A stretch of DNA of 64,000 bases, from contig JBLDXI010000001.1 in NCBI GenBank assembly GCA_047495785.1, positions 1,364,001 through 1,428,000 of the forward strand, written 5' to 3'. The translations under genes and the position numbers were made by a program. Origin of the DNA: Lepidodermella squamata. Lineage: Eukaryota > Animalia > Gastrotricha. The notes under the pieces are model-generated. The model was not told where the DNA came from and ran no database searches. It saw nothing but the letters and a program-made list of their open reading frames with translations. Below, piece after piece: positions 4,251 through 58,468 of the stretch; position 1 is the first letter of the stretch; each line of letters begins with the position of its first letter.

Positions 4251-7231
4251 TTAGTCGATAGCCGGCTTGTCTATAGGTACACTAGGCAGGCCTTCATCAT
4301 CAACGTCGACGAAGCTAGGAGCAGCGTCGCCGTGGCCATGCTGCATGAATACGTTGTTCCTACATAAATCATATAAATTTTTCAATATTTATTCTTTAAT
4401 GCATACCTATTCGGCCCGTAATTGCAGACGATAGTGAAATCCCATTCATTTCCAGGCGGTCTACAATGCGCCTTACCGCATCCAATGTATAGAATCTTGC
4501 CAAGTCGTGTGTTATCATCAGCTTTCGGCGGATCCGGCAGATCAGTAAAAAGCGATGTATCATTTATTTGAGCAAAAGCCGCCTTAATGTCAAGCCCCTC
4601 ATCGTCGGGCTTAGTCGATTTCCGTTGCCTAAGCGCCCATTCTGACACGCATTCTTTAATAGACTCGTCCCAACTTGCCCAGCAGATGTTCTGCCCGACG
4701 CCAGCAATTTCATCGAGGCCTAGGCTGGGTATTGTCCTTTGAACAACCTCGTCATGGCTTTCTAAACACTGACTCGCGTGCCGTTCCGCTGTTAGGGCAA
4801 GCTCTTCGTTCCAGACTAAAATCGGCAGATCAACCTCGTTTTGTTTAGATTTTCTCGCAACTGTTAGCCAGAGGTAGTGGAGTTTCAACGGCTCGTCGAC
4901 AGGAAACGGCACAGTATTTACAAGATATTTCGAATCATTTAAACAACTTGAGTGCTGTTTAGTGATCAAAACACCTGGTAAACAGTTTGGCTTAACAAAA
5001 TAAATTAGGGATTTTCACAAAAATTAGTCAAGAAACTTACCCCTCTCATTCCGCCACTTATCCTCAGAAGCGAGTGCTGATGGTGGTTAGTAGGATGGTA
5101 ATTAAGCGTCCAATTAGTGCCTAAACTAGCGGTTTTAATCCTCGAAGGGTTGTAGACTACATTAGACGTCCCGTTTGATAGCGGTTTATCTGTCGTAACT
5201 GGTAACGCTATCGAATTCTCGCGTTCGTAGAGACTAGTCTGAACGGCACTGTTCGAAAAATCAATCACCAGCGACGGGCCTTTATTCGATTGCATCGAGC
5301 TTGATTTCCGATTCGCTTTCGCATTAGCATCAGCAGAAAAGTAGCCCTTGAAATTTTCCATGGTAAGATTCACGAATGATTTCGGAGGCGGCATTGATGG
5401 TAGGAGTAATAAAGGCATTTGAGTTGTTGTAGTGGTGGAGGGCGTAGTTGGAGGGGTGGTGGTCGAAGTCGTGGTGGTCGTTGTTGTGGTGGTGGTCGTC
5501 GTCGGTGGTTCAGTTTTCGGAGTCGTTGTTGTAGTCGTCGTAGAAGTACTCGTAGTGCTTGTCATAGTAGTCGTCGTAGTACTCTGAGTAGTCGTGGTCG
5601 AAGTCGTGGTTGTCGGAGTGGTTGTGGTCGTCGTTGGTGTCGGAGTCGTGGTTGTACTAGTTGTAGTGGTTGTGGTAGTGGGCTGAGTCGTAACAGTTGT
5701 CTTCCTAGTTGTTGTAGTAGTTTTCCTCTTAGTCGTCGTAGTGGGTTCCGGGGTGGTTGTAGTCGTAGTTATCGGTTCGGGCTCTTGTTCCACCTCAATC
5801 TCAGGCTGCATCACTGGCACAGAGTCCATCGGATCCGGATCAGGTTCAAATACCGCCTCAGGCGTCGTCGAAGTTGTCCTAATCCGTTTCGGTCGTTCCG
5901 TGAAATAACTCTGAAAATGGCTGTAAGTAATCGGCTCCGGCCATCTAATGGTTGTCGTTCGATGCATAGCATGTGGCATGCAAATTTCGAGACATTCCTG
6001 CTTCGATGCGAAGCTGTTACGCTCGGCGAAATATTCCTGACTAAGCATGTACAGGCTTTTCTCGAGACAGTCGAAAAATACGTAACAACTCTGCCGTCTC
6101 GCGTCGAATTGCCACCGAATTTCTTCAAAAGTGCACTCCCGCTCTCTTTCCTGCGAAAATTGTTGTTGCCGTTGCTGCTGCTGCAGCTTCGTTTGATCAC
6201 GACATCGATTTTTCGAGGAAACGTTCGGTCGGTTTTGACGGTGGTTGTTGCTGCCGCTGCTACTACTACCGGCTGATTTGTAATGCTTCAGCTGTTCGAC
6301 GCATTTCGGCAGCCGTGGGACCCAGGTGCCATCGGCTGAACAGGTAACGGCAGCACTGCCGACCATTATCGTTCCATAAACGCATCGATACCACACGATA
6401 TCGCCATTTACAGAGTTCCGATCGCCGTCAAATGATGACTCATCAATAATTGCGTCTTCGACTACGGAAAGAAAACAAAAAATCGCTCATTTTAAAATTT
6501 TTATATTTTAATAATTCGAGAATAACAAATCCTCCTTAAAAAAATCAAATTATCTAATTAATTTTTAAAATTTAATTATAATTCATGAGAAATTAGGTCA
6601 AATTGACAGTTTTCCAGGTATTCTCTAGTGAGAAAATTATATTTAATTTTTTTATACCTATTGGCGCTGGTCCACATGATGCTTTTATGCTTGTTCTCGC
6701 ATTGTCATAAATATCGTCTATCAAGTCCCGCCTGCTTTCGATAGCGATTTCTGGTCCAAGTTCGGTTTCTCTCCCATGCTCTTCGTCACCTTCAGATTCA
6801 TTCACTTGCTCCGAAATGTCCCTCCCATCGTCAGAGCTCGTTTCCACTTTAAATTCAGACGCATAATCAGTTTGTTCGGGAGTCTCTTCCAAAGTTTCGT
6901 ACGCACTGATTGGCTTTTTGACGGATTTAGAGTAGTCGGAATATTCTGAAGTTCCAAGGCCCGACCCCCGAGAAGATGTGGGTGAATAGTTTTCTAGTTC
7001 AAAAAATATTCAATTTTGATTTACTTATTTTAATTGTTAATTATTACCTGCCGAATCCCACCGGTTGTATCTAGCAGCATAGGTGTATTGAAAATATTGA
7101 ATCGAAAGAGCAATAAAAATGATTTTATAAAATGTTGAATGACTGATAATCGAAGGCCGTAGCAGGCTGCTGGTACGATGCCGGATGCTGCTGTCGTGGG
7201 GTGAAAATTGAAAGACCAGTAGCTGCTTCAT
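4251..7231 (-). CDS. Acidic region-Sushi-Kunitz-like-mucin-degenerate CAP protein (about 5 exons)
   Basis: Sushi CGPAPI|VEDA...WYRCVYGTIMVGSAAVTCSADGTWVPRLPKC; Kunitz-like domain with polyQ insert; long poly-Thr stalk; SGGMRG|PNC; CAP motifs WNEELA..AERHA, GQNICW, IGCG, VCNYGP. HYTQ is replaced by AFAQ. Confidence 0.85.
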
Positions 7232-7604
7232 GTCGCGGCGGCTGTGGTCTCGCGTAGCCGGCTAAAGCGAACATGCCTCGCAGCCTCTATAGTCAAAAAA
7301 TATCTTCATAATTGTTGTCTGTTGCGGCTGCTCGCTGTAACGCTTTCATTGTCACGGCTGCTGTCGGCTCGTGTAAGTTTTCTCTTTCATATGCATGTTT
7401 GTTTTCCGTGAATAACTTTGCGAATAACACGCAAAATAAACAGGTCACATGACAAATTTTACTCAGCGTTAAATTGTCAAGCAAAAAAATAGGCGATGCG
7501 ATTGGCAACATAATTGCGGAGATTGAGAAAATGAATAAAAAAAATTGAAGAGTCAAATTTGAGAACCTTGACGTAAATTTTTCTGAAAATGTCTCTCAAT
7601 ACAA

Positions 7605-7663
7605 AAATTATGGAATCATTAAAAAATTATTTTTTTAATTATTTTTTAATGACTCCATAATTT
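7605..7663. repeat. 23-bp inverted repeat (1 mismatch) with 13-nt loop
   Basis: aaattatggaatcattaaaaaat (7605-7627) versus attttttaatgactccataattt (7641-7663). Confidence 0.75.
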
Positions 7664-8136: not shown

Positions 8137-9714
8137 ATGGTTAGATTTGTGACTCTTACTGTCGCACTGCTCGGAATTTGCAATCAATTTACGAATGCGC
8201 AGAACACGAGCCTTTACGCGGCTGAGAGCGAGATTTGCGGGCCTTTGAGTCTCGTCGACGGCGCTGCGCCTCTTCACGTGCCTTATGCCATGGCGAATGA
8301 CTACGGCCCAGCGGCGCAGGGGTGCGAAAATCACGAGGAGTGCGTCATTTTCGCGTGCCATCCTGGACGAAATTTAGTGGGCAAATTTATCGTGAAATGC
8401 GATGTTATAAGGTGGGTTATTCTTTAAATTTAAATTATGAAAAATTAAATTGAATCGTCTAGCCGCCAGTGGAGCGAGTTGCCCCAGTGTGTCCTTACCA
8501 CCCTACCAACAACGCCTTCAACTACAACCAAAGCTGCAGACCCGTGCGAAGATTCGCCCAAGACCGAAAATGCGGGATGTTGGCGCAAAAAACAACGGTG
8601 GCACTACAGCAAGGAGATAAAGCGATGCATGTCCTTCTTGACATGCGCGCGGGGCCCGGAATTAGGTGGAGGTTCGCCGAATGTTTTCGCCTCGGAGCAA
8701 GAATGCATTATGACATGCGCCAGACCCGAGGGACTTCTCAGGCTAAATGCGACAACACCACTGCCTCACATCCATCCAATCGCTCTTCCTTCGTTATCAG
8801 CAGCGAAGAAGCTGAAACCTTTGCCGGCTGGTATGACTCGGATCATGGTTACACAAAATCCTAAATTTAACGGCCTGGGCGCGCCGTTGCCCATCAGAGC
8901 GCCTACAACGCCGCAAAAAGTTAAATATGGCGGTTTGCATGTCCCGACCCGAAAAACGGGCGTTGTGCCTCGCACTACGACAAAGGAAATAATTTCAACA
9001 ATTGACCCAAATATTGCCAGGAGGCTAACCGGTGGACTGAGGGGGGTAAGTTTTGGTCCAAAAAAAATAAATTATTTTCAATAAATTTTTCCAGCGTCAA
9101 TGTCTCAAAGGGGTCGATGTCGAAACCCACTCTAGCTGCTTGCCCGATTCGAAAAATCTCTTAGCAATCGAGCCAATCGATGCACGAGAGGTTTTAGGGT
9201 TCCACAACGCGATTCGAGGCAATGTAACCCCTCCGGCCAGATTTATGCCCGAACTTGCTTGGAATTTCGACCTAGCCACAACTGCCGAACGATTCGCCGC
9301 ATCATGCCCGTCGGAAATCGAAGACTCTCCCGAGGCGCGTGCCCTACCGCGGTGGAAAACTGTCGGGCAGAATGTGTGTCATTCAATACGAGGCGACATG
9401 TCTCTCGCCGAATGTATCCTTCGAATTTGGGGCAGTGAGGCCATGTATTGGAGTTATGGTGTTGGCGAGACGGACCCAGATGCAATTGTTGCCCATTACA
9501 CCCAAATGATATGGTCTGGGACCCTGTTCGTCGGATGCGGAGTGGCGCGATGCACCAACTCAACCTGGACAACAACCATCGTTTGTGAGTTATTTGAAAA
9601 TTTTTAAAATTTTCAGAACATTTTCAATTTTTTTCTATAGGTAACTACGCTCCGGCCGGAAATTTCGCAGGCCCAGGTAGAAATCCTTACGCTGAGCCGT
9701 ATGTGAGGCTATGA
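8137..9714 (+). CDS. Secreted Sushi-like-Kunitz-like-CAP protein
   Basis: Signal peptide; 6-Cys Sushi variant; Kunitz-like RWHYSKEIKRCMSFLTC...NVFASEQEC; TGGLRG|intron; CAP with HNAIR, GQNVC, AHYTQMIW, C|NYAPAGN. Confidence 0.9.
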
Positions 9715-13909: not shown

Positions 13910-14100
13910 TTTTCATTTTTGTACCTAAAATTTACTGAAACTTGAAGACGAAAAATAGTGCGAGTAAAGACCTCTTTCCTATCTCAGGTGTTTGTTCTTG
14001 GTAAATGAAATTTGTGTTATCTAGTTCAGAGGCGGACAAATTGCGCGGTAGGTACCATATTATGAAAGGCCGTCCATTTCCGCAAAAAAATAACCGTGAG

Positions 14101-15657: not shown

Positions 15658-17462
15658 ATGTTTCTCGAGCTTTTCGGACTTGTAGTAGCTCTGGTTCCAG
15701 TTTGGAGCCAGACCCAACTTGTATTGAAAAGCAACGCCTGTGGGCCGGCTTTTGCGATACCATACGCCGGCTACCTGGTTTACGGCCAGAGTTACGGCCA
15801 GGATAGGCTAATCAACGCCTTGGACCCTGAATGTGCAAATCGCGGCCTTGAATGCATTGTTTTCCAGTGCATTGGCTCGCAACGAGTGCTGAGCGGCTCT
15901 CCAGTGGTGAAATGCGACAGGGTGACTAAAAAATGGTCGCCATTCCCGGTTTGCGAACCGTTCCGCGACTTTTGCCACGACGATGCCGCAAAGGAGGAAC
16001 GGCAATGTTGGCACAAAAAGCAACGCTGGCGCTACAACCCGAAAACCGACGGTTGCTACCAGGTCGAAACCTGCGCCCGGTCGCCTGAGCTCGGCGGTAA
16101 TGCCGTCAATATTTTCCTAACCGAGGAGCTGTGCAATCTTCAATGCAACTCGACCATCATCGGCCAACGCGCTATTGACCGGCAGAATTCGCCAATGTTC
16201 AAAATTCCGGCGACTAACGTTTTCATCCCGACGACTACAACCTTGCGAACCCCGCCCCCGCAATGGGTGTCTAAATTCGGTGGTGGTGTCACCCATGACT
16301 CGAATACTTTTGTCATCGAAGCAGCGGGCTCAACGACTTTTGGCGGCGTTGCGGCCCCTTCCCGGCCTGTTTCACCTGCTCCAAGAGCAAGCGTAACCGC
16401 GTTCCAGGATTTCCAGCAATATCTGAAGGCTCTAAAGGCGAAGGTGTCTTCAACAACAAAAATCGTAACAGCTACAACTGAATTAACGACACCCTCGACT
16501 ACGTCGACTACAACCTCGGCAACAACAATCGCATCAACCCCAGCGACGACTACAATTTCAAGCACAACAACCGAAACTGCTACCACAACTGAGCAATTTA
16601 TCACTATTGCCCCTGTTGAGTTGATTAACAAATGGATTGAATCCATGGATTTGGGCAGTGGAGCCTTGCCATCTCTCTTCAGCACTAATTCCGATGCAAT
16701 CGAGACTAGCGGTGGTTGGAGAGGGGTAATAAAACCTAAATTTTCATAATTAGGTGTAATTTTTTCCATAATTTTCCCCAAGCCAAACTGCGTGATGGAT
16801 GTGTTGTCAAACCACACGAGTTGTCTAAAGGATTCGCCAAATTTAATCAAAACAGCCGAGTTCAAAATCATCGATGTCCTAAATGCTCACAACAGGTTGC
16901 GGCGAATCGTCAACCCGCCAGCTGCTGATATGGTCGATCTCAAATGGGACGAAGATTTAGCCATCACCGCTGAACGGTGCGATCATTATTTGATCAAATT
17001 TGATCAATAATTAATTTTCATATCTAATAGGCATGCTGCGCAATGTTCGGGCGTTCATGATACCGAGTTGGCCCGGGCGTTGCCGAAATGGCCAAGTGTC
17101 GGGCAAAACGTGTTTTTCACATGGCCAGATGAGTTCAATTGGACGCAGGTTGTTAACAGTTGGGGCAAAGAACGGCTTCACTTTCAGTACGGCATCGGCA
17201 GCACTAGTCCTGAGCATACGATATCTCATTACGCTCAAATCATCTGGTCCGGAACAACGCACGTCGGGTAAGGATAGGGCTTGAAATTCTGGAGCAACTT
17301 GCCAATTTTTTGCTTGATTAAAGATGTGGAAAAGCGAAATGCAGAGCTCCGCCGGCCAAGTACGAATGGTTCTGGACATGTAATTATGCACCTGCTGCTC
17401 CTGTTCAAGGCACGGAAGAGGGCAAAGACCCGCTAGCTCGGCCCTACCGAGTTTTGCCATAA
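15658..17462 (+). CDS. Secreted Sushi-like-Kunitz-like-mucin-CAP protein
   Basis: Signal; ACGP...VKCD..WSPFPVC; RWRYNPKTDGCYQVETC; Thr stalk; SGGWRG|PNC; HNRLR, GQNVF, SHYAQIIW, WTCNYAP; ends ARPYRVLP*. Confidence 0.9.
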
Positions 17463-24138: not shown

Positions 24139-25764
24139 TTACGCTTTCTCGTAAGGATATTTGTAAGGATCTTCGCCCCAGTTTGCAACATTTCCCCTGA
24201 AAAAAACGAAATTAATTAAAATTTCAGAAAAATTGTTCGATAATTACCCAGGTCCATAATTGCACACCTGTGAGAAAAAAAATCAAAATTTATCAATTCT
24301 GGGACAGTAATTAAATGAGGATCCTCACCATTGCGTTTTCCCATTGGCCTTTGCATGAAGCTCTGCCACAACTGTTTTGAAAAAAATCATGAATTCTATC
24401 GCGAAAAAACTAGGATTGGTTTTTTAACTAACCCAACGTAGAGCGTCTTCGCCCAGATGAGCTGTGTCAAGTGTCCAACAACAGCGTCCTCCTTAGTCTG
24501 CCCAACACCGAATTCCCAATCCTTGATTTCATCATACCAAGCTTGGCTGGAAAATTCCGAAGGAGATGATTTTATTTAAAATTGAAACTTGAACTTACAC
24601 ACACTCCTGCCACGACCATTCGAACCCTGATGACCAGCAAATATTCTGCCCGACGTAGTCCCATTGGCTGGAGATGTTACGAGCGTCGTAAGAGTCGTGG
24701 CCATCAGGACACTGAGCTGCCCATCGCTCAGCCGTAATTGCCAGGTCTTCGTTCCACTGCAACAACGGCATTTTCTTCGCCTTATTCTGGAACATTTCTT
24801 AAAAAAACGCCACCTTAATGAAAAATTCCAGACAAAAAAAACAGGAATTACTTCTAATGCGATTGTGCTCATTCAGAGCTTCGGAAATCGGAAAAGACTT
24901 GGTTTTGATCAGATTCGACGAATCCTTCAAGCAGCTAGTATGGGCGCGATGAGCTCCTTTGATGCATTGAGGCTAAAACAATTATTAAATCATAAAATTG
25001 TCTCTTTTTTTTTAAGAAAAAATTACCCCTCTTAGACCACCTGTCATTCCGCTGGCAGAACCGTCGCTCGATTTGGTCGTTGTTGCCGCGGTTGTTGTAG
25101 TAGTTGTTTTCTCCATATCGTCAGCGCATTTCTTCTCGCAATCGCTGCGACTTCCGAACGAATTCTGCCAAGGCTGGCCACCAATGCAGCCGTAAACGTG
25201 TTGGCACTCCTTATTCCGGGTGTCAAACCGCCAGTAATACCCAGGCGTTGCCATTTTGCAGTCGTAGCTGCTTTGGTCAACAGTTGTCAGGTCGAAGCAG
25301 GAAATGTAGGCGTTCTTCGGCGGGACGTAAACTTCACCGCTGTCATCTGAGAAAAACGACATTTTGTTATCGCCATAGAAACTGTTATGATCGCCATCAT
25401 TGAACTCGTAAGATTCGACAGCTGATTGAGATTTGGCGCTCAAAGGGCAGGTTGGAGCCTCACTCCAGCTTCCATCTGTCGAGTCGCCGGTATTGAGCTT
25501 GCACGTTATGACTGGATTTCCGATTGTTGGCTTGCCGTTTTCGCAGTAGAAGGTAACTCGGTAGACCATCATGTTTCGTCCGGAGTCGTCCATGATAGAT
25601 TTAACCGTGGTTTCACTAGACGCACCGGCAACTGACGGTGCTGGCGGGCATTGGTATTGATAGGAATTTTGAAGTTTCAACCGCATTGGAACCGTGAATA
25701 AGAAAGCCATCGAGTTTGAGATGCCGAGAATCAGGATAAATCCGTAAACACCGAGATTAGCCAT
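24139..25764 (-). CDS. Secreted Sushi-Kunitz-like-CAP protein (many small CAP exons)
   Basis: Signal MANLGVYGFILILGISNSMA; CPPAP...FYCENG...CKL...WSEAPTC; WRFDTRNKECQHVYGC..NSFGSRSDC; TGGLRG|PQC; GQNICW, GHLTQLIW, CNYGP; ends PYEKA*. Confidence 0.88.
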
Positions 25765-43283: not shown

Positions 43284-44874
43284 CTAAGCCCTGACATATG
43301 GCATGGCAAAAGCATCGCCACCGTTCAAAAATGTCGCCTGATTTCCAGCTGGTCCATAGTTACAGTACTAAAAATTAAAGCCAATAGGTAATTTGTAGAT
43401 TGAAAATGAAATTGGGTAAACACAGACCATCAACACTTCTGGATACTCTTTGCATCTGATCCTTGCGCAACTGAAATTCAAAGAAAATAAAGCTCAGATC
43501 GATGATGAAATAGATCATATGACGCTCAAACCCGACAAATTTTGTATCTTCCCACACAATCTGCGTGTAATGCCCGACTCCGTCACCTCCTTCGCCATAT
43601 TTCCACTCAAACCTCTCATCTGCCCAGTATTTCGAGATGCATTCCTCCCAAGTCATCGCTGAGCCGTCGTCACTCAAACTGGCCCCACAAAGGTTCTGCC
43701 CAACTGTGTCATACTTGGGCAGATATCGATTGAAGTAGCGATCGTGTTGACCAGTGCACTGGGAAGCCCAACTAAGTAAAATTGGCAATGTATTGGCGAT
43801 GTATTTCAAAATAATGAAAATAAATAAACCCCGCTGCTTGCAGCGCTAAATTTTCGTCCCATTGCAAGTCAACCAAGGGCTTTTTAGCGGGCGGATCAAC
43901 GGTTCCTGAAAAGTGGACGTGTAATACAGATCGAAGTAAAATCACGGCAGAAACTTCGCCATCTGTTATGCTCCTCCAAAATCATCTGCTTCGTTCTTGA
44001 ATCCATCATCTCGAAGCCAACAAAGCTCTTTGCTGGCTCCAAGCACATGGAGTTTGAATTTTCCAATCCAAGAGGACAGGGCTGAAGTTTAATATGTAAT
44101 GAGCTAATGTATTTGGTCGCAAATGGAAAATACCTTATTTTGCCCGGTGTACGGAATAAGAACAGGCGGCGAAACAGTGCTTAAAGCAAGCTCAGGGTTT
44201 CGGCCCTTCTGGACTGCCGGCCGCAGCCTCTCAGGCTCGGGTGCTGGAGATGGCGTTGGTCGGTCTGTTATAAATTCTGGCCGGCGTTCTTGCTCGGCTG
44301 CTGATGGTCGCTGAACCGATTCAGTGATTCGCGAAGGATTGTTTTGGATTCTTTCTGGTTCTGCAACGGGTTGGACGGGCGGCGGCTCGTAGCGGAAGCG
44401 CACTGGCTCAGGAGCAGCCGGAATAATTTCAGTTGGTCTAGATTGTTCCCAGTCGCTTCCCCCGGTCTGTCTATTTACCGAGCTTTGGTCAGGATATTCG
44501 TCATAATTTTCGGGACACGAAGGTATCGGTTCACTCCAATATCCAGTGGAAGATGTTGTTCGACATTGTACACTATCAGTCGGTCGAGGATCTCCACCGT
44601 ACAAACAGTGATAAGTAGCGATTTCCACGTACACGCCATTTATTCTTTCGGCGGTGCTTCTGATGACGTACGCATTCGAAACTCTTGGCGGGTCGCCGCA
44701 CGGCTTGCCCCATCCGGGCAAACTACCTGCTCCAACGTTAGCAGTATCTTCCCAGTCTTTTCCATCTCTACGTCGCGGTATGCGGCGCCGTTTACCAGTC
44801 GATGGATCATATTGTCCCGAAATCAGCGGGAAAGCCAAAGCCGCGCAAATGAGGAGATGAGTTGCCACTTTCAT
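43284..44874 (-). CDS. Secreted Sushi-Pro-rich linker-CAP protein
   Basis: Signal; CGDPP...YHCLYG...VQC...WSEPIPSC; NSMCL; HNRWR, GQNLCG, GHYTQIVW, YCNYGPAGN; ends MPYVRA*. Confidence 0.88.
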
Positions 44875-45342
44875 CTTTTACAGATGCTTTCTTGAAAATG
44901 ATTTTCTGCGTGTAAGGAATGATGCATCAATGGACGGTTGTATTATAAGGCGTCTAAATTTCACGCCAAGTGTGTCTGTAGTGTGAACATGTTAATCTCA
45001 CCACGAAAGGTGGTCGCGCGTGCAATCTGTAGGTTAATCAAGCGCGCAATCAACCTCATCTTAATGACCCACGGTGAAGCTGGCAAAAACGGCTTCACGA
45101 TAACAGTCTTAAGGTTCAGAAAGCATTTCTCATGCACACCTAAGGAAGGGGGTTTCGCCAGAAACATGTTTTTCGGCTTATAAACATCCCGCTTCAGTCA
45201 AACGAATCAAGTGTTTGCTAAAATATTCACTTCACTGCATCTTCGCTAACTTTTTACTCATTTATACAGTAAAAGAATACGTGTCACTAATATACATTAG
45301 TTCCAGATAAATGCTTTTGCCACGCCGCCAGGCTTTCCATCC

Positions 45343-47564
45343 TCACGCTTTTTTATATGGAAATCCGTAAGGGTTGAAATTATTTTCGGCGGAGCCCACG
45401 TTACCACCAGGTCCGTAATTGCAGAACTGAAAACGCAAGGAGGTAATGGTGCTATATTTCATAAAAATAGAATTTCTTACCATATAGTATTGGCCAGCGC
45501 AGAAGGCTCTTGCACAGCTTGACATAGGGATATTGACGTTCAAATATGTTGCATAAAATAGATAATATTGTTCTCACCCAACAAGTTTTGTATCTGCCCA
45601 GATCACCTGAGTGTAATGTCCAACCTCACCGGTCGGTTGACCTCCGTAAGTCCAGTCTTTTTTCTCACCAGCCCACAATTCGCTGATACATTGGGGCCAT
45701 TCGATCTGCGATCCTCCGCAAAAATTTTGGCCAATAAACTCGTACTTTGGCAATGTTCTTGCGTCTTTATTGTCGTGGCCTCCGGTGCATTGAGTTGCCC
45801 ATCTTTGAATACAAATGCCTTTATTCACGTACATGCCTGAATCCTGCATTATTTACCCTCTTGCTTGTTTCGCTAAATCGTTGTCCCATTGCAAATCATC
45901 AATCGGGGTCGCTGCTGGTGGATCAACGCTCTCTACAAATGGTTTTATAATTAAAAAGGGTATCGAGGAGTTGCATCTAGCCACAACTTCTCCATTTGTT
46001 ATGCTCATCGAGTATTGTTTTGATCGTTTCTGGCGTCATCTCATCTGCTGATTCGAAACTGCTCACGGGCTTCAGGCACATTGAATTGGTTGGTGATAGC
46101 TCAGCAGGACAACCCTGCAATGTATTAAGGGTGATTACGAGTGAGATCTTAAAGTATCTTATATTATACCCCATCCGACGGAGAAGAAGGCGAAGGTCTC
46201 GGTGCTGGCCTAGGTGGGTTTTCTGCTGGGTTAGAAGGGGGCGCCGGTCTTGGATTTTGTGGCCGCGGTCTCGGGGCAGGTGACGGCGCAGATGCACTGC
46301 CATCAGTCTTGTACGGCATTCCAAATGGGTTGAAACCGTTTTCAGCTGTGCCCACATTTCCACCCGGGCCGTAATTGCAGAACTGTAAGATTAGGATATA
46401 GAAAATTTCAGTTTTTGATTCGCTGCTTGCGTACCATGTAGTATTGGCCTGAGCAATAAGCTCTTGCACATCCCACAAACTTGGAGTCTGCCCAGATAAT
46501 TTGCGTGTAGTGTCCGACTTCACCTCGTGGGCTAGCTCCATAGGTCCAGTCCTTCCTTTCACCCGCCCAGAGTTCGCTGATGCATTGTGACCATCCCAGC
46601 TGTGACCCTCCACAGAAATTCTGCCCAATGCTGTTGAACTTGGGTAACACTCGAGCCGAGTCTTCATCGTGGTTGCCATTGCATTGAGTCGCCCATCTTA
46701 AAATGTGAGAGAAATAATAAAAATTACGTTTATCTCGTCATCACCTAACCCTTTGGCCTGCCTAGCAAGATCGTCATCCCATTGTAAGTCCTCAATTAAA
46801 GGATTCGCGGCAGGTTCAACGCTCTCTTTATACAGAAAGGGATTAACTTGAACACTGAATATTATAAAAAGTAAGCGTCCTTACTTCGCCACTTGTTATG
46901 TTCGTCCAAGATAGTTTTTATAGTATCTGGTGTCATTTCATCCACCGACTCCATGTTACTCGATGGACTCAAGCACATGGAATTAGTTGGACTGAGATCA
47001 GGAGGACATCCCTATTGTTTTACGAGGAGAGAATGCTTCAGAACAACTCAAACACGGCGGATTTAAATTTTTTACCTGAGGGCTATTTTGGGCACCAGGA
47101 GATGGCCTTGGGCGGGGTGCCGAAGCTGGGGCCGGTGCAGGACGTTGTCTTTCGTTAGTATCCTGGTCGGGTCCATCATTACTATTCCGACCGCCTGACG
47201 GGTTAGGTTGAGGACGAGGCTGGTCAGTGCCGCCGCATGAAGGCGTCGGTTGACTCCATTCCCCTTCACCTGTATTAGTTATGCAGGTGACGGTATCTGT
47301 CGGCGTTGGCTCGGCTCCGTTGCGACAAGCGTAGACCACAGTCTCAGTATAGCTATTACCTCTAGACTGAGTGCTGCCACTTCTAACATAGCTTCCGCTG
47401 ATTTTGGGAGGCTCTCCGCAAGGTTTTTTGCCTCCCCCTCCACCGCGGCCACCGAACCCTCCTAAATCACCATCTTCACCGAAGCCACCATTATCGCCGT
47501 CAAATTGGGCGAAAGTTGCGACAGCGAATAGCAAAATAGCTAGGACGAATGATAAATTTCGCAT
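45343..47564 (-). CDS. Secreted Sushi protein with two closely similar tandem CAP domains
   Basis: Signal; CGEPP..YACRNG..C..WSQPTPSC; two copies of GCP..LSPTNSMCL...HNKWR...WATQC...GQNFCGGSQ...GHYTQ.IWAD...FCNYGPGGNVG, joined in frame by a Pro-rich linker. Confidence 0.88.
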
Positions 47565-48802
47565 TATTTCTCTTCTGTTAAAGGTAGAACAGAACTAATA
47601 TCCTGGCTTCTCCTTGGAATCCCCGAGGCAACACCGTGTTTTAATCCAACAAATCGTGCACAGTTTTCGTGGCGAGCATCAAGCATTCTTTTCTTAATGT
47701 ATCTGAATTATCATATTTCATCTAAAGAAAATGTGGGCGGTGTTAGCTCGAATTATATCTAAAGCATAACTTTACTAGAACAGCTTGAGTAAAGAAATGC
47801 GGATGATATTGAAGCGTAGGAATTTTTTTGAAGCAACCTTTTTCCATGTGGCGTAGCATTCATATGTCCAAAAGTACATATGCTTTTGTTAGTTCTCAGT
47901 TCAAAATTGTTCGATATATTCGAAGATATAGCAGAATCCGAGAAAAATCACAACAGCTGGATTTGTAGTAAAGATGCTCAGGAAAGAAATTCAGGAATTT
48001 GAAAGCAGTTAGGCTGAATTTCGGATCGCAGCTTTAACTCAGGAATCAAAATGTGCCCTATAATTTGTTGGCTCTAAATCCAAGGACTGTTATGGCCTGA
48101 ATTCACGCTTCTCCAGTTTAAAGATCATGGGCATCAATATCATCCACGTGCCAAATTGAAAATAGTGAATAAGTCCACGATTTACCCCACACTTATTCAA
48201 CTCATCAGTATACCCGCCTGTCCCGTTGGAGACGAGGATTCGATTCCCTGCCAAGACGAGATTTTTTTCCAATTTTAAATATTAACGCTATTCTAAATTC
48301 CATTAAAAACCATAAATTCACGGCCTGTAAAATCTTTGTATTTTACACTGTATTAATTTTTCTCGTGTGGCGCATTTTGTTATATCTCTATAAATACCTG
48401 CTGGGTCCTCCCCCGTCCCGTGCTACAACACATTTCCAAGAGAAAAAGCTGAATTAATGATGATTCTTTATTCAGCCTGATGGTACATTCCTAGGGCTTA
48501 ATTGCAGAGATCACGATTAACAATAAAGTTTTGTTAAATCTGCGGTTAAGATTGGAAACCGAAAAAGAGCGGGGTACCTATCAATATTTGATGTAAACAG
48601 CTACAATGCAAAAGTTGAAAGTTCTGAATATTTCTTTCCATAAAAATGGAATTGAAAACATGAGAAAGAAACCGAATTGGCGGTGATTTTTATTCTTTAA
48701 TCTGACAAAAAACCTCTGTAATCACATCAATCATCGGAGTTTCCAACGGCAATTTACATTGTTAAGAAAATATTATCTCTCTTTAGAAAACTCGACGAAG
48801 AT

Positions 48803-50277
48803 TTAGGCTTTTTTGTAAGGATACGAGTAGTATGTGAAGCCGTTCGCTCGAGAGGCCATGTTTCCGGCAGGTCCATAGTTGCAGAACTGTAAACGTAATA
48901 TAAGACTAGAAAAGTTCACAGAAATTAAAAGTGCGAGCAAACCATGACAAATCCCCCTGAGCTGCACTTGACTCGGGAACATCCTACTGCAACTGTATCA
49001 GCCCAAATCACTTGGGTCCAGTGGCCAACACCACTGCCTTCAACGCCATGCGTCCACTTGGTGCGTTCACCTGCCCACATGTCGACGCACTGCTTCCAGT
49101 CAGCATAACCTCCGCACATGTTCTGGCCAACGCTTCGATATCTTTAAAAAACTGGATTTGAGATTTGATAAACCAAAAAGCTTATGCTATATACGTGGCT
49201 GAAGTGGGTTTATTGTGATTTGTGTTGCACGTGACCGCCCACCTGAAAAAGCAATCAGTAATTTGATTCCGCTTTCTTACAAGACGCTTTCTGTCTTACG
49301 CTTTGGCTGAAGCAGCAAGGTCGTCGTCCCACTTCAAATCAGGAATAGGCGGGTTAGCTTTTGGGAATCCGAGGCTCTCGTCATTAATGCCCCCTGGAAT
49401 TACACAACATGTTGAAAGACGACGAACAAGAATGACACGTCGCCTTACTTCTCCATTGATTGTGGTTTGATAGTATGAGGTTTTTAACGTCATCAGTATT
49501 GACATCTACCGAAACGCAGGGAGAAGAGCAGCTCTATCGAACGGAGTGTTCAATATTACGACAATTTCTTCAAGTTCCTAGATAAGTTACCTCTGTGGCT
49601 GGGGAACCAGAAGGGGAAGGCTGAGGTGCAGGTCTTGATTCCCTTGGGCTTGGGCTTGGGCTTCTCACGACGACTGCTGGTGTTGGTGGTGGGCTTTTGG
49701 TGCGGGGAGGAGCGGTCGGCGGCGCCGGCGTGTCATCCTCAACTGGGCTGCCATCGTCTACAGCATCGGTTGATTCCTCCTCCGTCGTAGTCGTTGTAGC
49801 TTCTGTTGTTGTTGTTGTTGTTGTTGTTGTAGTTTTCGTGGTTCTGGTATTTTGGCTTGGCGTTGATGTTTGGCTTACCCCACAAGACGGTATCGGCTGC
49901 GACCATTTACCCGTACTGCTCAGCGTGCTGCAAATTAAAGCCTCGGGGACAGCTGGCCTGTTTGTCTTTGTGCATGTATACTTGCGCACTTCAGTATAGT
50001 TATTGTTCCTTTGATTTGTGGTCGAACTCGACATGTATGCGCCCGGAATAGTAGGAGCCTCACCACATCGGTTCATCGTCATCGGTACGTAAGCACCGTA
50101 GCCTCCACCGCCAGGGCGCATCGGAGGCATAGGGGGCCAGTTGTTGTTGCCTCCCCAGCCTCCCCATCCACCGTTATCTCCATCTCCACCGTCTCCGTTG
50201 TTGTCTTCATTTTCATCTTGAGCAAGTGAAACGTGTGCCAAGAGGCCGAGGAGAAAGAGCAACTTGAATTGTTTCAT
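48803..50277 (-). CDS. Secreted Gly/Trp-Sushi-mucin-CAP protein
   Basis: Signal; GGWGGWGG; CGEAP...YTC...IC...WSQPIPSC; Thr/Pro stalk; HNQWR, GQNMCG, GHWTQVIW, FCNYGPAGN. Confidence 0.87.
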
Positions 50278-50548
50278 TTTATCAGCGAAAACTGGAGGAC
50301 TGGAGGACTACTATCCCGTTAAATAGCAGCAGCGAGCGCGGGCTATGTTATCTTCGAAATGACTTGGCTAATGCCTCCCCCGGCATTTTTCAAAACCTGC
50401 CACGATATTTCTTAAACAATACGCGTTTCCAACAAAAAATATAAAACATGACAGTTTTTTGCGGCACAAAGGCTCCCACCAAAGTTATTAACATTTTTTA
50501 CTCGGTCACGACACTTAAGGAAGTCGTTTTTTAATGGATAACGTGTGT

Positions 50549-51856
50549 CTAATTTCTCTCGTACGGCTTCGAGAAAGGATTGAAATTGTTTGATTGAGAG
50601 CCAACGTTGCCTGAAGGGGCGTAATTACAGACCTAAACCAGAACAAAAACAGAAGCAAGTAATGAAAGAATCAGAATAATAGAACTAACCAAATATCTGT
50701 TCAAACCGGATCCGCCACATGTTGCCCTTCCACATCTGAATAAAATTTGAAAAGCAGGACGCTCAGGAAGCCCTTGATTAATCATATTAAAACGTACCCG
50801 ATGTATTTTGTACCTACAATGAAAGGTGAAAAAGTTTACTTGAGCTCTGAAGTGATCATGACTTACCTGCCCAAATGACTTGAGTGTAGTGGCCCACTGG
50901 CTGGTCATTTTTAGCTCCTGTGCCATATTCCCAGTCTTTCTTTTCATCCGCCCATGACGTTATGCATTCCGTCCATGGCTGATCAAAACTCGCGAAGCAC
51001 ATATTCTGCCCGATCATTCCGAAGCCTGGCTTCTCTTGAATGCCTCGGTTGTCGTTGTCATCGTGATTCTGGGAGCACTGGGCGGCCCAACTGATTGAAA
51101 AAAATTAGCCTCAAGAAAAATAATCGAGAGGACATCATACTTAGCTGCGCCACGCGCAAGGTCATCATCCCATTGCAAGTCAGGGATTGCTGTTTTTGCT
51201 GGAGGATCGACACTTTCTAAAACATCTCAAGCTTTACATTTTAGTGAACTATTTGAACTCCTCACTCCTCCATTTGGAATGCTCGTTAATTATCTCTTTG
51301 ATTATATCAGCTGTGACAGCAGGCACACTTGCACCTCGCTTGTAGGCAAGGCACATGGAATGTGGAGGTTGCAAACCATAGGGACAGTTCTAATCAACAA
51401 ATCGAATGAAATGAACAATTCGATAAAGTTCTATCTTACAGTAGCCGGCGACTGAGCTGGGCTCGAATTTGTGGGCTTTGGCCCTGGCTGTGGCGCTGGA
51501 ATGTCATCGACTTGTTCCTTCGTTGTATCAGGCTGAGGTTCTGGTGCAGGGGCAGGGTTGCTTGATGAGCAAGTAGGAGCCGGCGAGCTCCACTTTTTGC
51601 CCTTAGCCGTTAATTTGGCAGCACAAATTATTTCAGCAGTTGGTGTAGGCGCCGACCCATCCATGCAAGCATAGGTTACTGTAGCCTTGTAATTACTTCC
51701 CTCCACCTCACTCGACATTCCTGCAACGTAGCCACCCGCGACATTCGGTGGATCTCCGCAAGGCTTCGGATCATCATCGCCATCCTGCGCAACATTTGGC
51801 TGGATGAGGAATGTGCCAAATGCTAAAGCCAAGGTCAGTAAAAGCTCTCCTCTCAT
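50549..51856 (-). CDS. Secreted Sushi-CAP protein
   Basis: Signal; CGDPP..YACMDG..IC..WSSPAPTC; HSMCL; GQNMCF, GHYTQVIW, 16-nt micro-exon (GTKYIG), VCNYAPSGN; ends PYERN*. Confidence 0.87.
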
Positions 51857-52419
51857 TTTTCCAGCAACAATATGTGAAGGGATAAGTATTAAGGCCGATT
51901 AACGTAAGCGGCAGCGGTCATCACGTTATTAAAGCTAACCTCTTGTCATGTGTATTTGTTATTATATAAGTATAGTATAACGCTTGGAGATAAACATGAA
52001 TAAACCATCATCTAGCAGTGCATAGTAAATTACTCAAATTTCTTTAGGGACATACTTTTTCCAGTGAAAATTTGAGTTTTCCCAAAATTGATCTTAAGAA
52101 ATCAAGAGGACAGTTCTTGCAGATAACTCATCGACCTAGCTCAACCCAGCAAATGGCGAATAAATGACAGTTTAAGACCTTCGTAAATGATGCCTAAAAG
52201 CGTGGAAATGTTGTCGTTCATGGGTCCATCACTAGGCTCTGTCAGCAGCCTTAACAAGACTTGTCTCACCTCCGATTTTTCATTAATAGAGGCATCCGAT
52301 TCATTCGTGATGTTTTCAATTTTCCATTCCCTGCTCCGTAATTTCATTAGATCTCCAATCTCCAGAGCAACAAATAACGCTAGATTTTCAATTTATTTTC
52401 GCTAAAAGTTCATAAACAG

Positions 52420-55984: not shown

Positions 55985-56426
55985 TTTTTGAGGAATAAAT
56001 ATAAAAATTTATGAAGAATTATGTTTTGACTGAGTATTATATAGGGCGGGTCCGCATCACGTTGCACCCACTCCTTATTCCTTACTCGCCACGTAATCGT
56101 GGGTCGAACATCAGATAGCTAACAACTTCAGGGGAGAATAAGCTTCCAGTGCATTTTTACAGTTTTCCTACGAGCAATACACCTACCCAAGATGTTTCTA
56201 TCAAGCTGCCTTAATGTAATAAGCAACGCGGATCCACCAGTCCGTCAACAGCGATTCGCCATTAAGGGAACAAGTAATGTCACCACGCATCATAAACCAC
56301 AGGTTGCACCGAGTGTGCACCAAAAAACTTGCACTTGGGCTAATAATCAACTGGTACTAAAACTTCATAAAATTAACAGGAATTCAAAATAAGGTTTAAT
56401 TTAAAAAATCAATCAACATAAAAGTA

Positions 56427-58468
56427 TCAATTAATAGCATAAGGCCTAGCGTAAGGATCGGATCCGTTTGTTCCAACGTTTCCACCGGGAGCGTAGTCAC
56501 AGACCTTAAGCAATATTCAAATAGCATTGCTGATTAATCTCAAGATTTCGAGACCTACCAAAACATATTCTACTGAAGCATTTCTGCAACGCGTTTTGCC
56601 ACAGCCGACGAAAAAGGTGTCACCCCATACCAATCTGTGAAGTGAAATGGTGCGAAAATCTGATATAGTTTGATTCGAAGTCCTTACTGAGTATAATGGC
56701 CGATTTGACCTTTTCCTACTTGTCCTGAACCATAGCGCCAATCTTTAATGAAAGTTCATATACCAGGTATTTTGATAACAAAAGTGAAGTTGTCCAGTTT
56801 ACCTTTTCGCTCTGCAGCCCAGCTGTTGATACATTCCGTCCAAGACATTGAATAACCCCAAGAGTAGCAAATATTCTGCCCAACCCAGTCGTAAGCAGAA
56901 CCTCTCGCGCCACGCAATGGTAATGCACGATTTTCTCCACGGTCGTGTCCCATCACGCATTGTGCCGCCCAGCGCTCAGCCATTGTGGCTAAGTCATCGT
57001 CCCATTGAAGCTGAGGCAAAGGAAAGTTAGCAGGAGGTGATACTCGACCTTAATAGCAATAGAATAAGTTGCCTGTGAAAACTATAACAACATTTACTTC
57101 TCCAATAGTTATGCCGTGATATGATTTCAGCAGGCGGGCTACGTTCATAGCCTAAAAAGTTCGTTGAATCATTCAAGCACATAGCGTGAGGAGCTTTCAG
57201 GTTGTATCGACATTTTGGCTGTAAGGAAGCTTTAAATGCCTATAAACGCATTCGATCTCAGAAGGACTCACCCCTCTTGGAGGAAGAGTAACCGGAGGTC
57301 CACCGCCTGAGCTGCTAAGGTAAAATCCACTTCCCGAGAAGGAGTCACCGCTTGCCTCATCTTCCGCGGATTCGTTATCTGGCTCGTCCGAGTTAGCTAT
57401 TTTGTAAGGTTGAGCATACGCATTTTGACCATTCAAAGCCAAGTTTCCACCAGGGCCATAATTGCAGATCTAGGATTCATTCACTTCGAGGGTAACTACT
57501 AGTGTTTATTGGACTTACAAGAATATGCCGAAGTCCTTCGCATTTGACCCTACCACATCCAACAAATAGCGTGTCTTGCCAAACTAGTCTAAAAATAGTA
57601 TTTAAAATGATTAGCTTTAGTTTAAATATCTCACTGAGTGTAGTGGCCGACTATTCCAGTTCCTAATTGCCCAGTGCCGTATCTCCAGTCCTTCCGTTCT
57701 TCGGCCCATTTATCGATAGCCGCAGTCCAGTTCGGTGCTGTAAAACCCCAACCGATATACATATTTTGACCTACCTTTATAACAATGCCATAATGAGTTC
57801 TGAGCATTTAATAACAAGAAACGAACCCAAGACCACGCTGGCCGATTCGGTGGCCGCTCTGGAATTTCTCTGGCAGATGTGGGGGTATGTTCCAGCGAAC
57901 ATTGAGCAGCCCATCGCTCAGCTATCAAAGCCAAGTCTTCGTCCCATCTCAATTTTGGCAAGGGTCGTCTTGATGGGGGCGACAGGTTTTCTCGCCAGTA
58001 GTTATGTCTGAGCAGGATTTCGCTCTGAGAACTAGGCTCTATCGCTTCAAGAGCAGGTGAATTCGGCAAACATATAGCGTGGCTTTGCGGCAGACCATAT
58101 TTGCAGTCGTACTAAAATATTGGAAAAATAGGCATTCCAGTTTCAGCTTAGATAAATGAAGTTACTGTTTGAGTGAAAGCGGGGCGAGGCGTACGAGGCG
58201 ATGATGTAGCAGCTAAACTGCAAATTGGCAACGGGTCCATCCATATTCCGTTGACACAGTTGACAATTCCGCTCCCGATCAGAGTCCCACGGAGGCAGAT
58301 GTAGGTAAATTTTATTGACCTCGATAATACTGTGTTATTTGGCAGCGTTCTGGTAGAAATCTGCTGCGAGGCTATGAAACCGCCCGCAACATCGGGTGGA
58401 TTATCACACGGGGCAGCTGCTATGAATGTCAGTGAGATCAAGTTTAAAAGTAAGCGAGGCTTAATCAT
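56427..58468 (-). CDS. Secreted Sushi protein with two tandem CAP domains
   Basis: Signal MIKPRLLLNLISLTFIAA; CDNPP...YICLRG..IVNCVNGIW..PIC; two CAPs (RHNYWR, WAAQC, GHYTQ, CNYGP/CDYAP) joined by ...LPPRG|PKC. Confidence 0.85.

What the first reader, a model, noticed from the sequence alone, without database searches (positions are those of the whole stretch)
5040..57285. Conserved GGx(R)G|phase-0 intron|PQC junction in front of CAP cassettes: shuffling point and possible protease release site
Seen: otherwise unalignable low-complexity stalks end in nearly the same peptide right at a phase-0 donor: SGGMRG (~5045), TGGLRG (~9040), SGGWRG (~16720), SGGSRG (~19890), TGGLRG (~25035), KGGLSG (~29140), SGGRRG (~28265), SGGLIG (~27135), LPPRG (~57275). 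The next exon starts [PAR][QNK]C. Inference: the CAP unit is a portable phase-0 cassette. Conservation upstream of the splice site suggests selection on the peptide, for example an Arg-Gly cleavage site that frees the CAP domain from its stalk, possibly cut by the co-clustered Arg/Lys-specific CUB-trypsin. Two copies lack the Arg.
Basis: partly seen in the sequence, partly recalled or inferred. Interest (0 to 1): 0.75.

Follow-up and report, generated by a model that had tools for sequence, protein, structure and literature searches.

The report
Conserved glycine-arginine peptide before CAP domains
In a cluster of secreted-protein genes of a small invertebrate, every CAP domain of one subfamily is preceded by the same six-residue peptide (Ser/Thr-Gly-Gly-Leu-Arg-Gly). 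The peptide is inherited and kept by selection, with or without the intron beside it, but whether it is a protease cutting site or only a flexible hinge is still open.

Summary
All nine peptides sit at the stated places, each ending at a phase-0 GT donor, and the next exon starts [PRA][QNK]C. The exact DNA pattern occurs 17 times in the 121-Mb genome, 7 of them inside this 61-kb cluster and always before a CAP exon.

The reading is only partly right.
- The "stalks" are not just low complexity. They carry a signal peptide, a Sushi domain, a Kunitz-like domain and a Thr-rich linker, so the genes are whole-gene paralogues. One gene holds three CAP units in a row.
- A related species from metagenomes has syntenic orthologues with saturated synonymous sites. 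It keeps GGLRG-PQC at five of seven junctions, and three of the seven have no intron. So the peptide is under selection, not the splice site; only the final GGG codon tracks the intron.
- The glycines are never lost in these GG-type copies, but the Arg was lost four times independently.
- AlphaFold places the motif in a low-confidence coil just before the ordered domain.

My best reading is an inherited hinge or N-cap of an antigen-5-type CAP extension. Its Arg-Gly bond, which resembles the fibrinogen GGVR|GPR site, is a possible but untested and non-essential cleavage site. The neighbouring CUB-trypsin is not next to the one orthologue whose upstream flank could be read. No RNA evidence was obtained.

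The parts
4982..5058 (-). Junction 1: SGGMRG (5058-5041), 50-nt phase-0 intron (5040-4991), PNC start of the CAP exon
   Evidence: orthologue in the relative reads AGGLRG|intron|PKC (L021 minus strand)
9028..9103 (+). Junction 2: TGGLRG (9028-9045), 49-nt phase-0 intron, RQC start of the CAP exon
   Evidence: orthologue P0006 reads TGGLRGPQC with no intron (L021:6001-7356)
16708..16791 (+). Junction 3: SGGWRG, 57-nt phase-0 intron, PNC start of the CAP exon
   Evidence: orthologue P0018 is intronless and degenerate here (HGGHKAGFEWKC)
19434..19901 (-). Junction 4: SGGSRG, 441-nt phase-0 intron, PQC start of the CAP exon
   Evidence: orthologue in L024 minus strand reads FGGSSG|54-nt intron|PHC
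24964..25044 (-). Junction 5: TGGLRG, 54-nt phase-0 intron, PQC start of the CAP exon. Upstream exon 25027-25800 holds signal peptide, Sushi, Kunitz-like domain and Thr linker
26868..27146 (-). Junction 6, between CAP2 and CAP3 of the three-CAP gene: SGGLIG (no Arg), 252-nt intron, PQC
   Evidence: orthologue P0014 reads SGGLRGPQC with no intron and with Arg
28012..28278 (-). Junction 7, between CAP1 and CAP2: SGGRRG, 240-nt intron, PQC.
   Evidence: orthologue reads TSGGLRG|intron|PQC (L022)
29070..29149 (-). Junction 8, between the Sushi-Kunitz-linker exon and CAP1: KGGLSG (no Arg), 53-nt intron, AQC
   Evidence: orthologue reads YTGGLRG|intron|PQC with Arg (L022)
57210..57286 (-). Junction 9, between CAP1 and CAP2 of a two-CAP gene: LPPRG, 53-nt intron, PKC. 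Divergent version without the Gly-Gly
26155..29830 (-). One gene with signal peptide, Sushi, Kunitz-like domain and three CAP units joined by Thr/Pro linkers
   Evidence: open frames run from each CAP C-terminus (CNYGPGGN...PY) through the linker to the next donor; Pfam Sushi and CAP; in the relative one uninterrupted ORF spans the CAP2 end, the linker and the CAP3 start (P0014)
30182..31985 (-). Neighbouring CUB-trypsin gene: signal peptide, CUB, Thr linker, R|IVGG activation site, His/Asp/Ser triad, Asp at the S1 position
   Evidence: ORFs; Pfam CUB and Trypsin; no counterpart next to the three-CAP gene orthologue in L022
12565..15306 (+). Two paralogues (12565-13935 and 14098-15306) with the same Sushi-like/Kunitz-like head that lack both the xQC pre-CAP module and the GGxRG peptide; the second has no intron at the linker-CAP boundary
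   Evidence: CAP hits
43378..51898 (-). Second CAP subfamily: Sushi head, Pro-rich linkers, CAP exons starting GCPxxLSPTNSMCL or similar. Inferred junctions NSPQ|GCP, PSDG|GCP and GQNK|PCP carry no GGxRG

Best explanation
What it is (shown). [ST]-G-G-L-R-G followed by P-Q-C is the conserved N-terminal boundary of one subfamily of CAP domains. These domains carry an antigen-5-type N-terminal extension, C-x(9-11)-H-[ST]-x-C-L-x-D-S. The subfamily belongs to a lineage-specific family of secreted proteins built as signal peptide - Sushi - Kunitz-like - Thr-rich (mucin-like) linker - one to three CAP units.

How it got to nine (ten) places (shown). The copies arose by descent, through tandem duplication of whole genes and of CAP-plus-linker units. 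Afterwards the linkers diverged beyond alignment while the junction peptide stayed under purifying selection. The peptide is the selected object, not the intron: the intron is missing at three of seven orthologous junctions in a related species, and only the choice of GGG for the last glycine follows the presence of a donor site.

How it works (inferred). The glycines form a flexible hinge or N-cap at a fixed distance, three residues, from the first disulfide cysteine. This uncouples the folded CAP unit from the stiff, probably O-glycosylated stalk. The Arg-Gly bond in this exposed stretch was present at all junctions in the common ancestor. It may serve as a site for a trypsin-type protease, but cleavage is not required, since Arg has been lost repeatedly.
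For: Motif and junctions.
Cluster-specific occurrence: 7 of 17 genome-wide pattern hits, all before CAP exons. There is no intronless copy and no CGN-codon copy elsewhere near a CAP gene.
Shared architecture: Sushi and Kunitz_BPTI matches upstream.
One origin: 15 of 16 GG-type cassettes form one group with support 94/97, and window/relative orthologue pairs are recovered.
Orthology: synteny of the 5041/9045 pair in L021 and of the 16725/19884 pair in L024. CAP identity is 69%, upstream identity 41%, and synonymous sites are saturated.
Peptide kept with other codons and without an intron: ACA GGT GGG CTT CGT GGT|CCC CAA TGT and AGT GGA GGT TTA CGA GGG|CCT CAA TGT. All 14 intron-bearing junctions end in GGG.
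Glycines outlast Arg: Gly-Gly and the last Gly are kept in all 16 GG-type junctions of the two species; the LPPRG copy at 57272 keeps only the last Gly. Arg was lost in 4 junctions, and each time the orthologue keeps it.
Coupling to the extension: paralogues without the xQC module also lack the motif.
Structure: AlphaFold model of P0006:236-451, mean pLDDT 91.5. The motif is in coil, with mean pLDDT 52 for the 10-residue block around GGL and 82 for the next block; confident order begins within the next block, about at the first Cys. The fold is that of CRISP/antigen 5.
Against: A plain hinge does not obviously need Leu and Arg at fixed positions, nor exact spacing to the cysteine.
The alignment behind the model has only about four rows that contain the motif, so low pLDDT there is weak evidence of disorder. 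Model coordinates could not be inspected for contacts.
No transcript or protein data were obtained, so nothing here excludes that the proteins are in fact cleaved at Arg-Gly wherever Arg is present.
Confidence: 0.5

Rival explanations
1. Protease release site. GGLR|GPQC is cut after Arg by a trypsin-type serine protease. This frees antigen-5-like CAP modules, whose new N-terminus lies three residues before the first cysteine, from the Sushi-Kunitz-mucin carrier and from each other. The multi-CAP genes would then be polyprotein precursors.
For: The motif lies in low-confidence coil directly before the ordered domain.
Five of six positions match the thrombin site of fibrinogen A-alpha, GGVR|GP, cut at Arg16-Gly17 (PMC5265910).
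All junctions had Arg in the inferred ancestor.
More distant paralogues in the same genome often end the upstream exon in [RK]-G or R: NPLRG, IARRG, FEKKG, GPR[HYN]G, NER, SSR (inferred splice sites). P0010 of the relative reads PKRG-SQC.
Among 58 pre-CAP modules of the 150 best relatives, 21 sit right behind a signal peptide. 12 of the 37 internal ones have RxxR or a dibasic pair within 12 residues upstream, against 11% in control windows. A free N-terminus at this spot is therefore common in the family.
A trypsin with Asp at the S1 position lies 350 nt from the three-CAP gene.
Against: Arg, which should be the most constrained residue of such a site, is the least stable one. It was lost four times independently, twice in single-CAP genes, while the glycines are never lost in the GG-type copies.
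The CUB-trypsin is not adjacent to the orthologue of the three-CAP gene in the relative.
There is no protein or RNA evidence. The resemblance to a thrombin site is an analogy only.
Confidence: 0.28
2. Splicing signal. The conserved exon end is kept because it helps recognition of the donor site, as an exonic enhancer or extended U1 pairing, not because of the peptide.
For: All 14 intron-bearing junctions in the two species end in GGG before GT, whereas the two inner glycines use GGT/GGC/GGA. The exon end is purine-rich.
Against: Three orthologous junctions have no intron. Two of them keep GGLRG-PQC exactly, with changed synonymous positions (CGT GGT, CGA GGG), and the third keeps the Gly-Gly. 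Other donors in the same genes end in TTT, TGG, CGA or GAA. This accounts for at most one synonymous position.
Confidence: 0.04
3. Recognition or modification motif without cleavage, for example a docking site for a partner protein or a stop signal for O-glycosylation of the stalk. The GLR-GPQ stretch would be read as a short specific epitope.
For: The whole six-residue pattern and its spacing are conserved, including Leu in 10 of 17 junctions. It always follows a Thr/Pro-rich linker.
Against: No known motif of this kind was found (literature search for GGLRG). The x and Arg positions vary. Nothing here points to a partner.
Confidence: 0.12

Closest known systems
CAP superfamily, CRISP / antigen 5 branch (natrin, triflin, Ves v 5, Sol i 3)
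   Same: Pfam CAP hits. Sequence E-value 1.5e-24 to natrin. Foldseek E-value 5e-15, TM 0.66 and 34-36% identity to natrin. Ves v 5 and Sol i 3 align over about 213 columns, which includes the N-terminal extension. The C...H-[ST]-x-C module resembles the antigen 5 N-terminus (from memory).
   Different: Here the CAP unit is not at the N-terminus of the mature protein. It follows a Sushi-Kunitz-like-mucin region or another CAP unit, and the GGLRG peptide before it was found in none of the 150 best relatives outside this lineage.
Multi-CAP proteins (double-domain hookworm Na-ASP-1; six-CAP Octopus vulgaris protein CAI9730330.1)
   Same: Several CAP units in one chain joined by linkers (P0001; Na-ASP-1 appears).
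   Different: Their inter-domain linkers show no GGxRG and mostly no basic residue before the first Cys. None is known to me to be processed into single units.
Thrombin cleavage site of fibrinogen A-alpha (GGGVR|GPRVVE, Arg16-Gly17)
   Same: The pattern G-G-[V/L]-R-G-P is shared (PMC5265910).
   Different: This is analogy only. The protein, organism and biology are unrelated, and cleavage is not shown here. In fibrinogen the Arg is essential (Arg16His causes disease), whereas here Arg is lost in 4 of 17 junctions.
Propeptide-bearing CAP proteins (vertebrate PI15/CRISPLD type, from memory) and plant PR-1 to CAPE1 processing
   Same: They are precedents for proteolytic processing of CAP proteins. 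Furin-like RxxR sites lie a few residues before the pre-CAP cysteine in molluscan relatives such as the Haliotis 'serotriflin-like' protein. CAPE1 is released from the PR-1b C-terminus (PMC13205790). The CNYxPxGN...PY end of each CAP unit is present here too.
   Different: Those sites are multibasic (furin) or C-terminal (CAPE). The site here is monobasic, glycine-flanked and N-terminal. I could not retrieve a paper documenting the PI15 propeptide.
Exon shuffling of symmetric phase-0 modules
   Same: The CAP-plus-linker unit is flanked by phase-0 introns and is repeated within genes.
   Different: There is no evidence that the unit moved into unrelated gene contexts, since all carriers share the same head domains. 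The junction intron is absent in several orthologues.

Membership tests
CAP / SCP superfamily (PF00188) | Significant match to the CAP profile | tested here: met
   63 exon-wise hits in the genome over the curated cut-off, several of them in the window; P0006 E-value 1.7e-12; exon 28261-28587 E-value 3.5e-7
CAP / SCP superfamily (PF00188) | Alpha-beta-alpha sandwich fold of solved CAP proteins | tested here: met
   AlphaFold model of the orthologue P0006:236-451 with mean pLDDT 91.5; Foldseek to natrin 1xx5 E-value 4.7e-15, TM 0.66
Antigen 5-type N-terminal extension | Cysteine-bearing segment C...H-[ST]-x-C before helix 1 that is ordered on the domain | tested here: met
   C3, H12 and C15 are invariant in 10 window cassettes; model blocks 21-30 and 31-40 have pLDDT 82 and 95; Ves v 5 and Sol i 3 align over about 213 columns. 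Disulfide pairing was not verified
Sushi / CCP domain (PF00084) in the upstream exon | Profile match over the curated cut-off | tested here: met
   Exon 29132-29830 scores 24.9 bits against a cut-off of 20.7; exon 47001-47594 scores 21.1 bits. The other copies are weaker
Kunitz/BPTI domain (PF00014) in the upstream exon | Profile match and six-cysteine spacing | tested here: inconclusive
   One copy is over the cut-off (8449-9045, 23.4 bits against 21). The others score 13-19 bits. By eye the cysteine spacing departs from the canonical pattern, and no inhibitory loop could be assigned
Endoprotease processing site (trypsin/thrombin type, cut after Arg) | Arg at P1 conserved in all substrates | tested here: not met
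   Arg is present at 13 of 17 junctions in the two species. It was lost four times, each time with the orthologue keeping it
Endoprotease processing site (trypsin/thrombin type, cut after Arg) | Site lies in an exposed, unstructured segment | tested here: met
   Coil, with mean pLDDT 52 for the 10-residue block that holds GGL. This is weak evidence because few alignment rows contain the motif
Endoprotease processing site (trypsin/thrombin type, cut after Arg) | Cleaved products exist | not testable with these tools
   No proteomic data are available.
Exon-shuffling cassette | Module flanked by introns of the same phase | tested here: met
   Phase 0 at all nine donors and acceptors. The reading frame across the joins is confirmed by intronless orthologues
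Exon-shuffling cassette | Module found in unrelated gene contexts | tested here: not met
   All carriers share the signal peptide - Sushi - (Kunitz-like) - linker head. Cassettes with the motif form one group in the tree

The most novel reading that the evidence does not exclude
GGLR|GPQC is a dedicated cleavage site of the fibrinogen GGVR|GPR type. On this reading the Sushi-Kunitz-mucin-(CAP)n proteins are polyprotein precursors from which a clotting-type serine protease releases free antigen-5-like CAP modules, with a new N-terminus three residues before the first cysteine. That would be a regulated release system for CAP proteins, not described in any animal that I know of.
Probability: 0.25. 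Interest if true: 0.6.

Novelty: new variant of a known kind. Interest (0 to 1): 0.35.

Why it matters
CAP proteins (CRISPs, antigen 5, PR-1, helminth venom-allergen-like proteins) are widespread secreted proteins whose modes of action are mostly unclear.

This lineage-specific family has up to three CAP units strung on mucin-like linkers behind Sushi and Kunitz-like domains. Each unit is preceded by a six-residue peptide that has survived saturation of synonymous sites and even loss of the adjacent intron. That gives a clean, testable case of a functional domain-boundary element.

If the Arg-Gly bond is cut, it would be the first CAP polyprotein system. If it is not, the family shows how a short hinge can be conserved as strongly as the domain core.

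The comparison also documents presence or absence of an intron at exactly the same codon boundary between two related species. With it comes a visible codon effect: the last glycine is GGG wherever there is an intron.

Tried and rejected
Word-index protein searches with the upstream exon, the CAP exon and P0006 found nothing beyond the query itself. The exhaustive representative search was therefore used.

RNA evidence could not be obtained. The look-up of sequencing runs listed three holders, none on record as RNA. One local script ran tblastx of the whole window, those bases included, against three already fetched loci inside the sandbox, and no reported hit covered them.

Spliced gene models were never joined. 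All family, homology and structure queries used single exons by reference or database proteins, so no fold of a window-encoded stalk-CAP junction was made. The orthologue P0006 was folded instead.

Literature searches for a documented PI15/CRISPLD propeptide and for GGLRG in a CAP context gave nothing usable.

Ideas rejected:
- Glycosaminoglycan attachment site: no SGxG and no acidic flank.
- Furin site: no RxxR at the junction itself.
- Collagen-like triplets: only two G-X-Y triplets.
- Splice enhancer as the main cause: see the rival explanations.

Complex prediction was not used, because the protease domain is split over two exons and could not be submitted unjoined.

Full report
Observation.

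I read all nine places. On the stated strand each shows the claimed peptide ending a complete codon directly before GT[AG]:
- TGGLRG at + 9045
- SGGWRG at + 16725
- KGGLSG at - 29132
- SGGRRG at - 28261
- SGGLIG at - 27129
- TGGLRG at - 25027
- SGGSRG at - 19884
- SGGMRG at - 5041
- LPPRG at - 57272

Downstream, after 49 to 441 nt, an ag acceptor precedes RQC, PNC, AQC, PQC (four times), PNC and PKC. A conserved module follows, with consensus PQCLxGVxxxHSSCLxDSPNL and then CAP helix 1; C3, H12 and C15 are invariant in ten cassettes.

Conservation is an island. The 18 exon bases before the donor are conserved. The 27 bases further upstream and the intron beyond +4 are not. The third positions of the two inner glycine codons vary among GGT, GGC and GGA.

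The window is C1:1364001-1428000 of a 121-Mb eukaryotic genome. Genome-wide, the pattern GGNGGNNNNAGRGGGGTR occurs 17 times, against 5 for the reversed control. Seven of the 17 lie within 61 kb of this cluster, each before a CAP exon; the seventh is just past the window end. Versions with CGN arginine codons, or without an intron, do not occur near CAP genes elsewhere in this genome.

What the genes are.

The upstream regions are not only low-complexity stalks. Each gene starts with a signal peptide, a Sushi domain (Pfam 24.9 bits in the exon 29132-29830), a divergent Kunitz-like six-cysteine domain (23.4 bits in 8449-9045, weaker elsewhere) and then a Thr/Pro-rich linker that ends in the motif.

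The gene at 26155-29830 (minus strand) is a single gene with three CAP units. The frame runs from each CAP C-terminus (CNYGPGGN...PY) through a linker to the next SGGxxG donor. The gene starting at 58495 has two CAP units, and LPPRG is its internal junction.

Many CAP cassettes in the window do not carry the motif:
- the first unit of the 58495 gene (FTQT|YDC);
- a second subfamily at 43378-51898 with Pro-rich linkers and GCPxxLSPTNSMCL starts;
- two paralogues at 12565-15306 that lack the whole xQC module.

Elsewhere in the genome, on contigs C17, C66, C14 and C25, related cassettes also start xQC after a phase-0 acceptor. Their upstream exons end in NPLRG, PKLG, IARRG, FEKKG, GPR[HYN]G, NER or SSR, and some have no basic residue. 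Those splice sites are inferred from sequence only.

A tree of the first 41 residues is poorly resolved, as expected for so few columns. It still puts 15 of the 16 GG-type cassettes in one group (support 94/97) and pairs window copies with their counterparts in the relative.

Relatives.

Word-index searches found nothing. The exhaustive search found a related species in two ENA metagenomes.
- P0006 (451 aa) is the orthologue of the 9045 gene. L021 holds it head to head with the orthologue of the 5041 gene, as in the window.
- L024 holds the orthologues of the 16725 and 19884 genes side by side.
- L022 holds the orthologue of the three-CAP gene.

The divergence is deep. CAP identity is 69% and upstream identity 41%. 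The proportion of synonymous differences is 0.83, which is saturated. The linkers cannot be aligned between orthologues, yet the alignment ends in ...RR-x-TGGLRG in both.

The seven junctions of the relative read as follows:
- TGGLRGPQC, no intron, codons CGT GGT
- AGGLRG|intron|PKC
- YTGGLRG|intron|PQC
- TSGGLRG|intron|PQC
- SGGLRGPQC, no intron, codons CGA GGG
- HGGHKAGFEWKC, no intron, degenerate
- FGGSSG|54-nt intron|PHC

Three conclusions follow.
1. The intronless open frames confirm the window's splice joins and phase.
2. The peptide is conserved independently of the intron and with different codons, so selection acts on the protein. Only the last glycine codon follows the intron: it is GGG at all 14 intron-bearing junctions and GGT or GGG otherwise.
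3. The two Arg-less copies of the window (Ser at 29132, Ile at 27129) have Arg in the orthologue, and two junctions of the relative have lost Arg where the window keeps it. Arg was therefore ancestral everywhere and was lost four times independently. The Gly-Gly pair and the last Gly were never lost in the GG-type copies.

Because the junction intron is shared by paralogues all over this genome, its absence in the relative is most simply intron loss.

Structure.

I folded the orthologue P0006:236-451 with a 48-row alignment. Mean pLDDT is 91.5. GGLRG corresponds to model residues 18-22 and lies in coil. The 10-residue block 11-20 averages pLDDT 52 and the block 21-30 averages 82; from 31 onward the values are 95 or more.

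The xQC...HSSC extension is therefore ordered on the domain, and the motif sits at the edge of order, not in a strand. Only about four alignment rows contain the motif and I could not inspect coordinates, so this is modest evidence.

The nearest solved proteins are snake CRISPs (natrin, phmmer E-value 1.5e-24, Foldseek TM 0.66). Antigen 5 proteins (Ves v 5, Sol i 3) align over the extension as well.

Cleavage site or hinge.

In favour of cleavage:
- The location is exposed.
- The motif resembles the thrombin site of fibrinogen A-alpha, GGGVR|GPR, cut at Arg16-Gly17 (PMC5265910).
- Basic residues occur near the same boundary in more distant paralogues.
- Among 58 pre-CAP modules in the 150 best relatives, 21 lie directly behind a signal peptide. 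12 of the 37 internal ones have RxxR or a dibasic pair within 12 residues, against 11% in control windows. Examples are RKKR, RHKR and RRKR in molluscan proteins, one of them named serotriflin-like in Haliotis. A free N-terminus a few residues before the first cysteine is thus usual in the wider family.
- The neighbouring CUB-trypsin is intact and has Asp at the S1 position.

Against cleavage:
- Arg is the least stable of the conserved positions.
- Two of the four Arg losses are in single-CAP genes.
- The trypsin is not found beside the orthologue of the three-CAP gene in the relative.

I therefore rate a hinge or N-cap function of the glycines, with an optional Arg-Gly site, as most likely (about 0.5). 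Obligatory proteolytic release comes to about 0.28, another recognition role to about 0.12, and a splicing signal to under 0.05.

Shuffling.

The unit from xQC to GGxRG is flanked by phase-0 introns and has been duplicated inside genes, which fits intron-mediated unit duplication. There is no sign that it moved into unrelated contexts, and the intron is dispensable. The nine copies are explained by descent.

Organism.

I did not test the identity of the organism. Earlier notes of this scan guess a rotifer or the gastrotrich Lepidodermella squamata. The best named CAP relatives are molluscan.

Handling notes.

A local sandbox tblastx of the whole window against three fetched loci included them, and no reported hit covered them.

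Verdict.

This is a real, selectively maintained junction peptide in a lineage-specific Sushi-Kunitz-like-mucin-CAP family. It is a new variant within a known superfamily, of moderate interest, and its possible role as a cleavage site is testable.

Noticed in passing
L021:6001-7356; L022:8001-8717; L024:895-2133, compared with window 9045, 27129 and 16725: The phase-0 intron at the linker-CAP boundary is absent at three of seven orthologous junctions in the related species; the orthologue of the 9045 gene is entirely intronless. Because paralogues across this genome share the intron, repeated intron loss is the simplest reading. The last Gly codon is GGG at all 14 junctions that have the intron.
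   Followed up: partly
window 26155-29830 (-), 56500-58495 (-), 45300-47594 (-): Multi-CAP genes: three, two and two CAP units in one reading frame behind a single Sushi-bearing head. Larger arrays lie on other contigs (C17, C66, C14, C46, and the similar C25/C26 arrays).
   Followed up: partly
window 12565-13935 (+) and 14098-15306 (+): Two paralogues with the same Sushi-like and Kunitz-like head have lost the whole xQC...HSSCL pre-CAP module together with the GGxRG peptide. In the second, the linker runs into CAP helix 1 without an intron.
   Followed up: partly
window 30182-31985 (-): Intact secreted CUB-trypsin with a Thr-rich linker, an R|IVGG activation site and an S1 Asp, 350 nt upstream of the three-CAP gene. 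No counterpart was seen in the roughly 6 kb upstream of the orthologous gene in the relative (L022).
   Followed up: partly
window 52490-54052 (-) and 55466-55984 (-): A stretch with strong GC skew (+0.21, GC 0.50-0.53) encodes secreted proteins with a Sushi-like head. This is followed by long Pro/Gln-rich repeats punctuated by SPC(G/S/N) motifs, with a 205-nt tandem repeat at 54729-55426. It is another Sushi-headed family of unknown function.
   Followed up: no
ends of the CAP units, e.g. window 28261-28587 (-) and 27129-27551 (-): Each CAP unit ends in CNYGPGGN-x(5-8)-PY. As I recall, this is the motif after which plant PR-1 is cut to release CAPE1. Here it is followed by the linker, so a linker peptide would be bounded by PY and R|G.
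   Followed up: no
proteins P0050, P0013, P0088, P0103, P0143, P0138: Many molluscan and metagenomic relatives carry classical furin-type sites (RRKR, RTKR, RKKR, RHKR, RGKR, RERR) 3-14 residues before the first cysteine of the pre-CAP module. This suggests that propeptide removal at this position is widespread in this CAP branch.
   Followed up: partly
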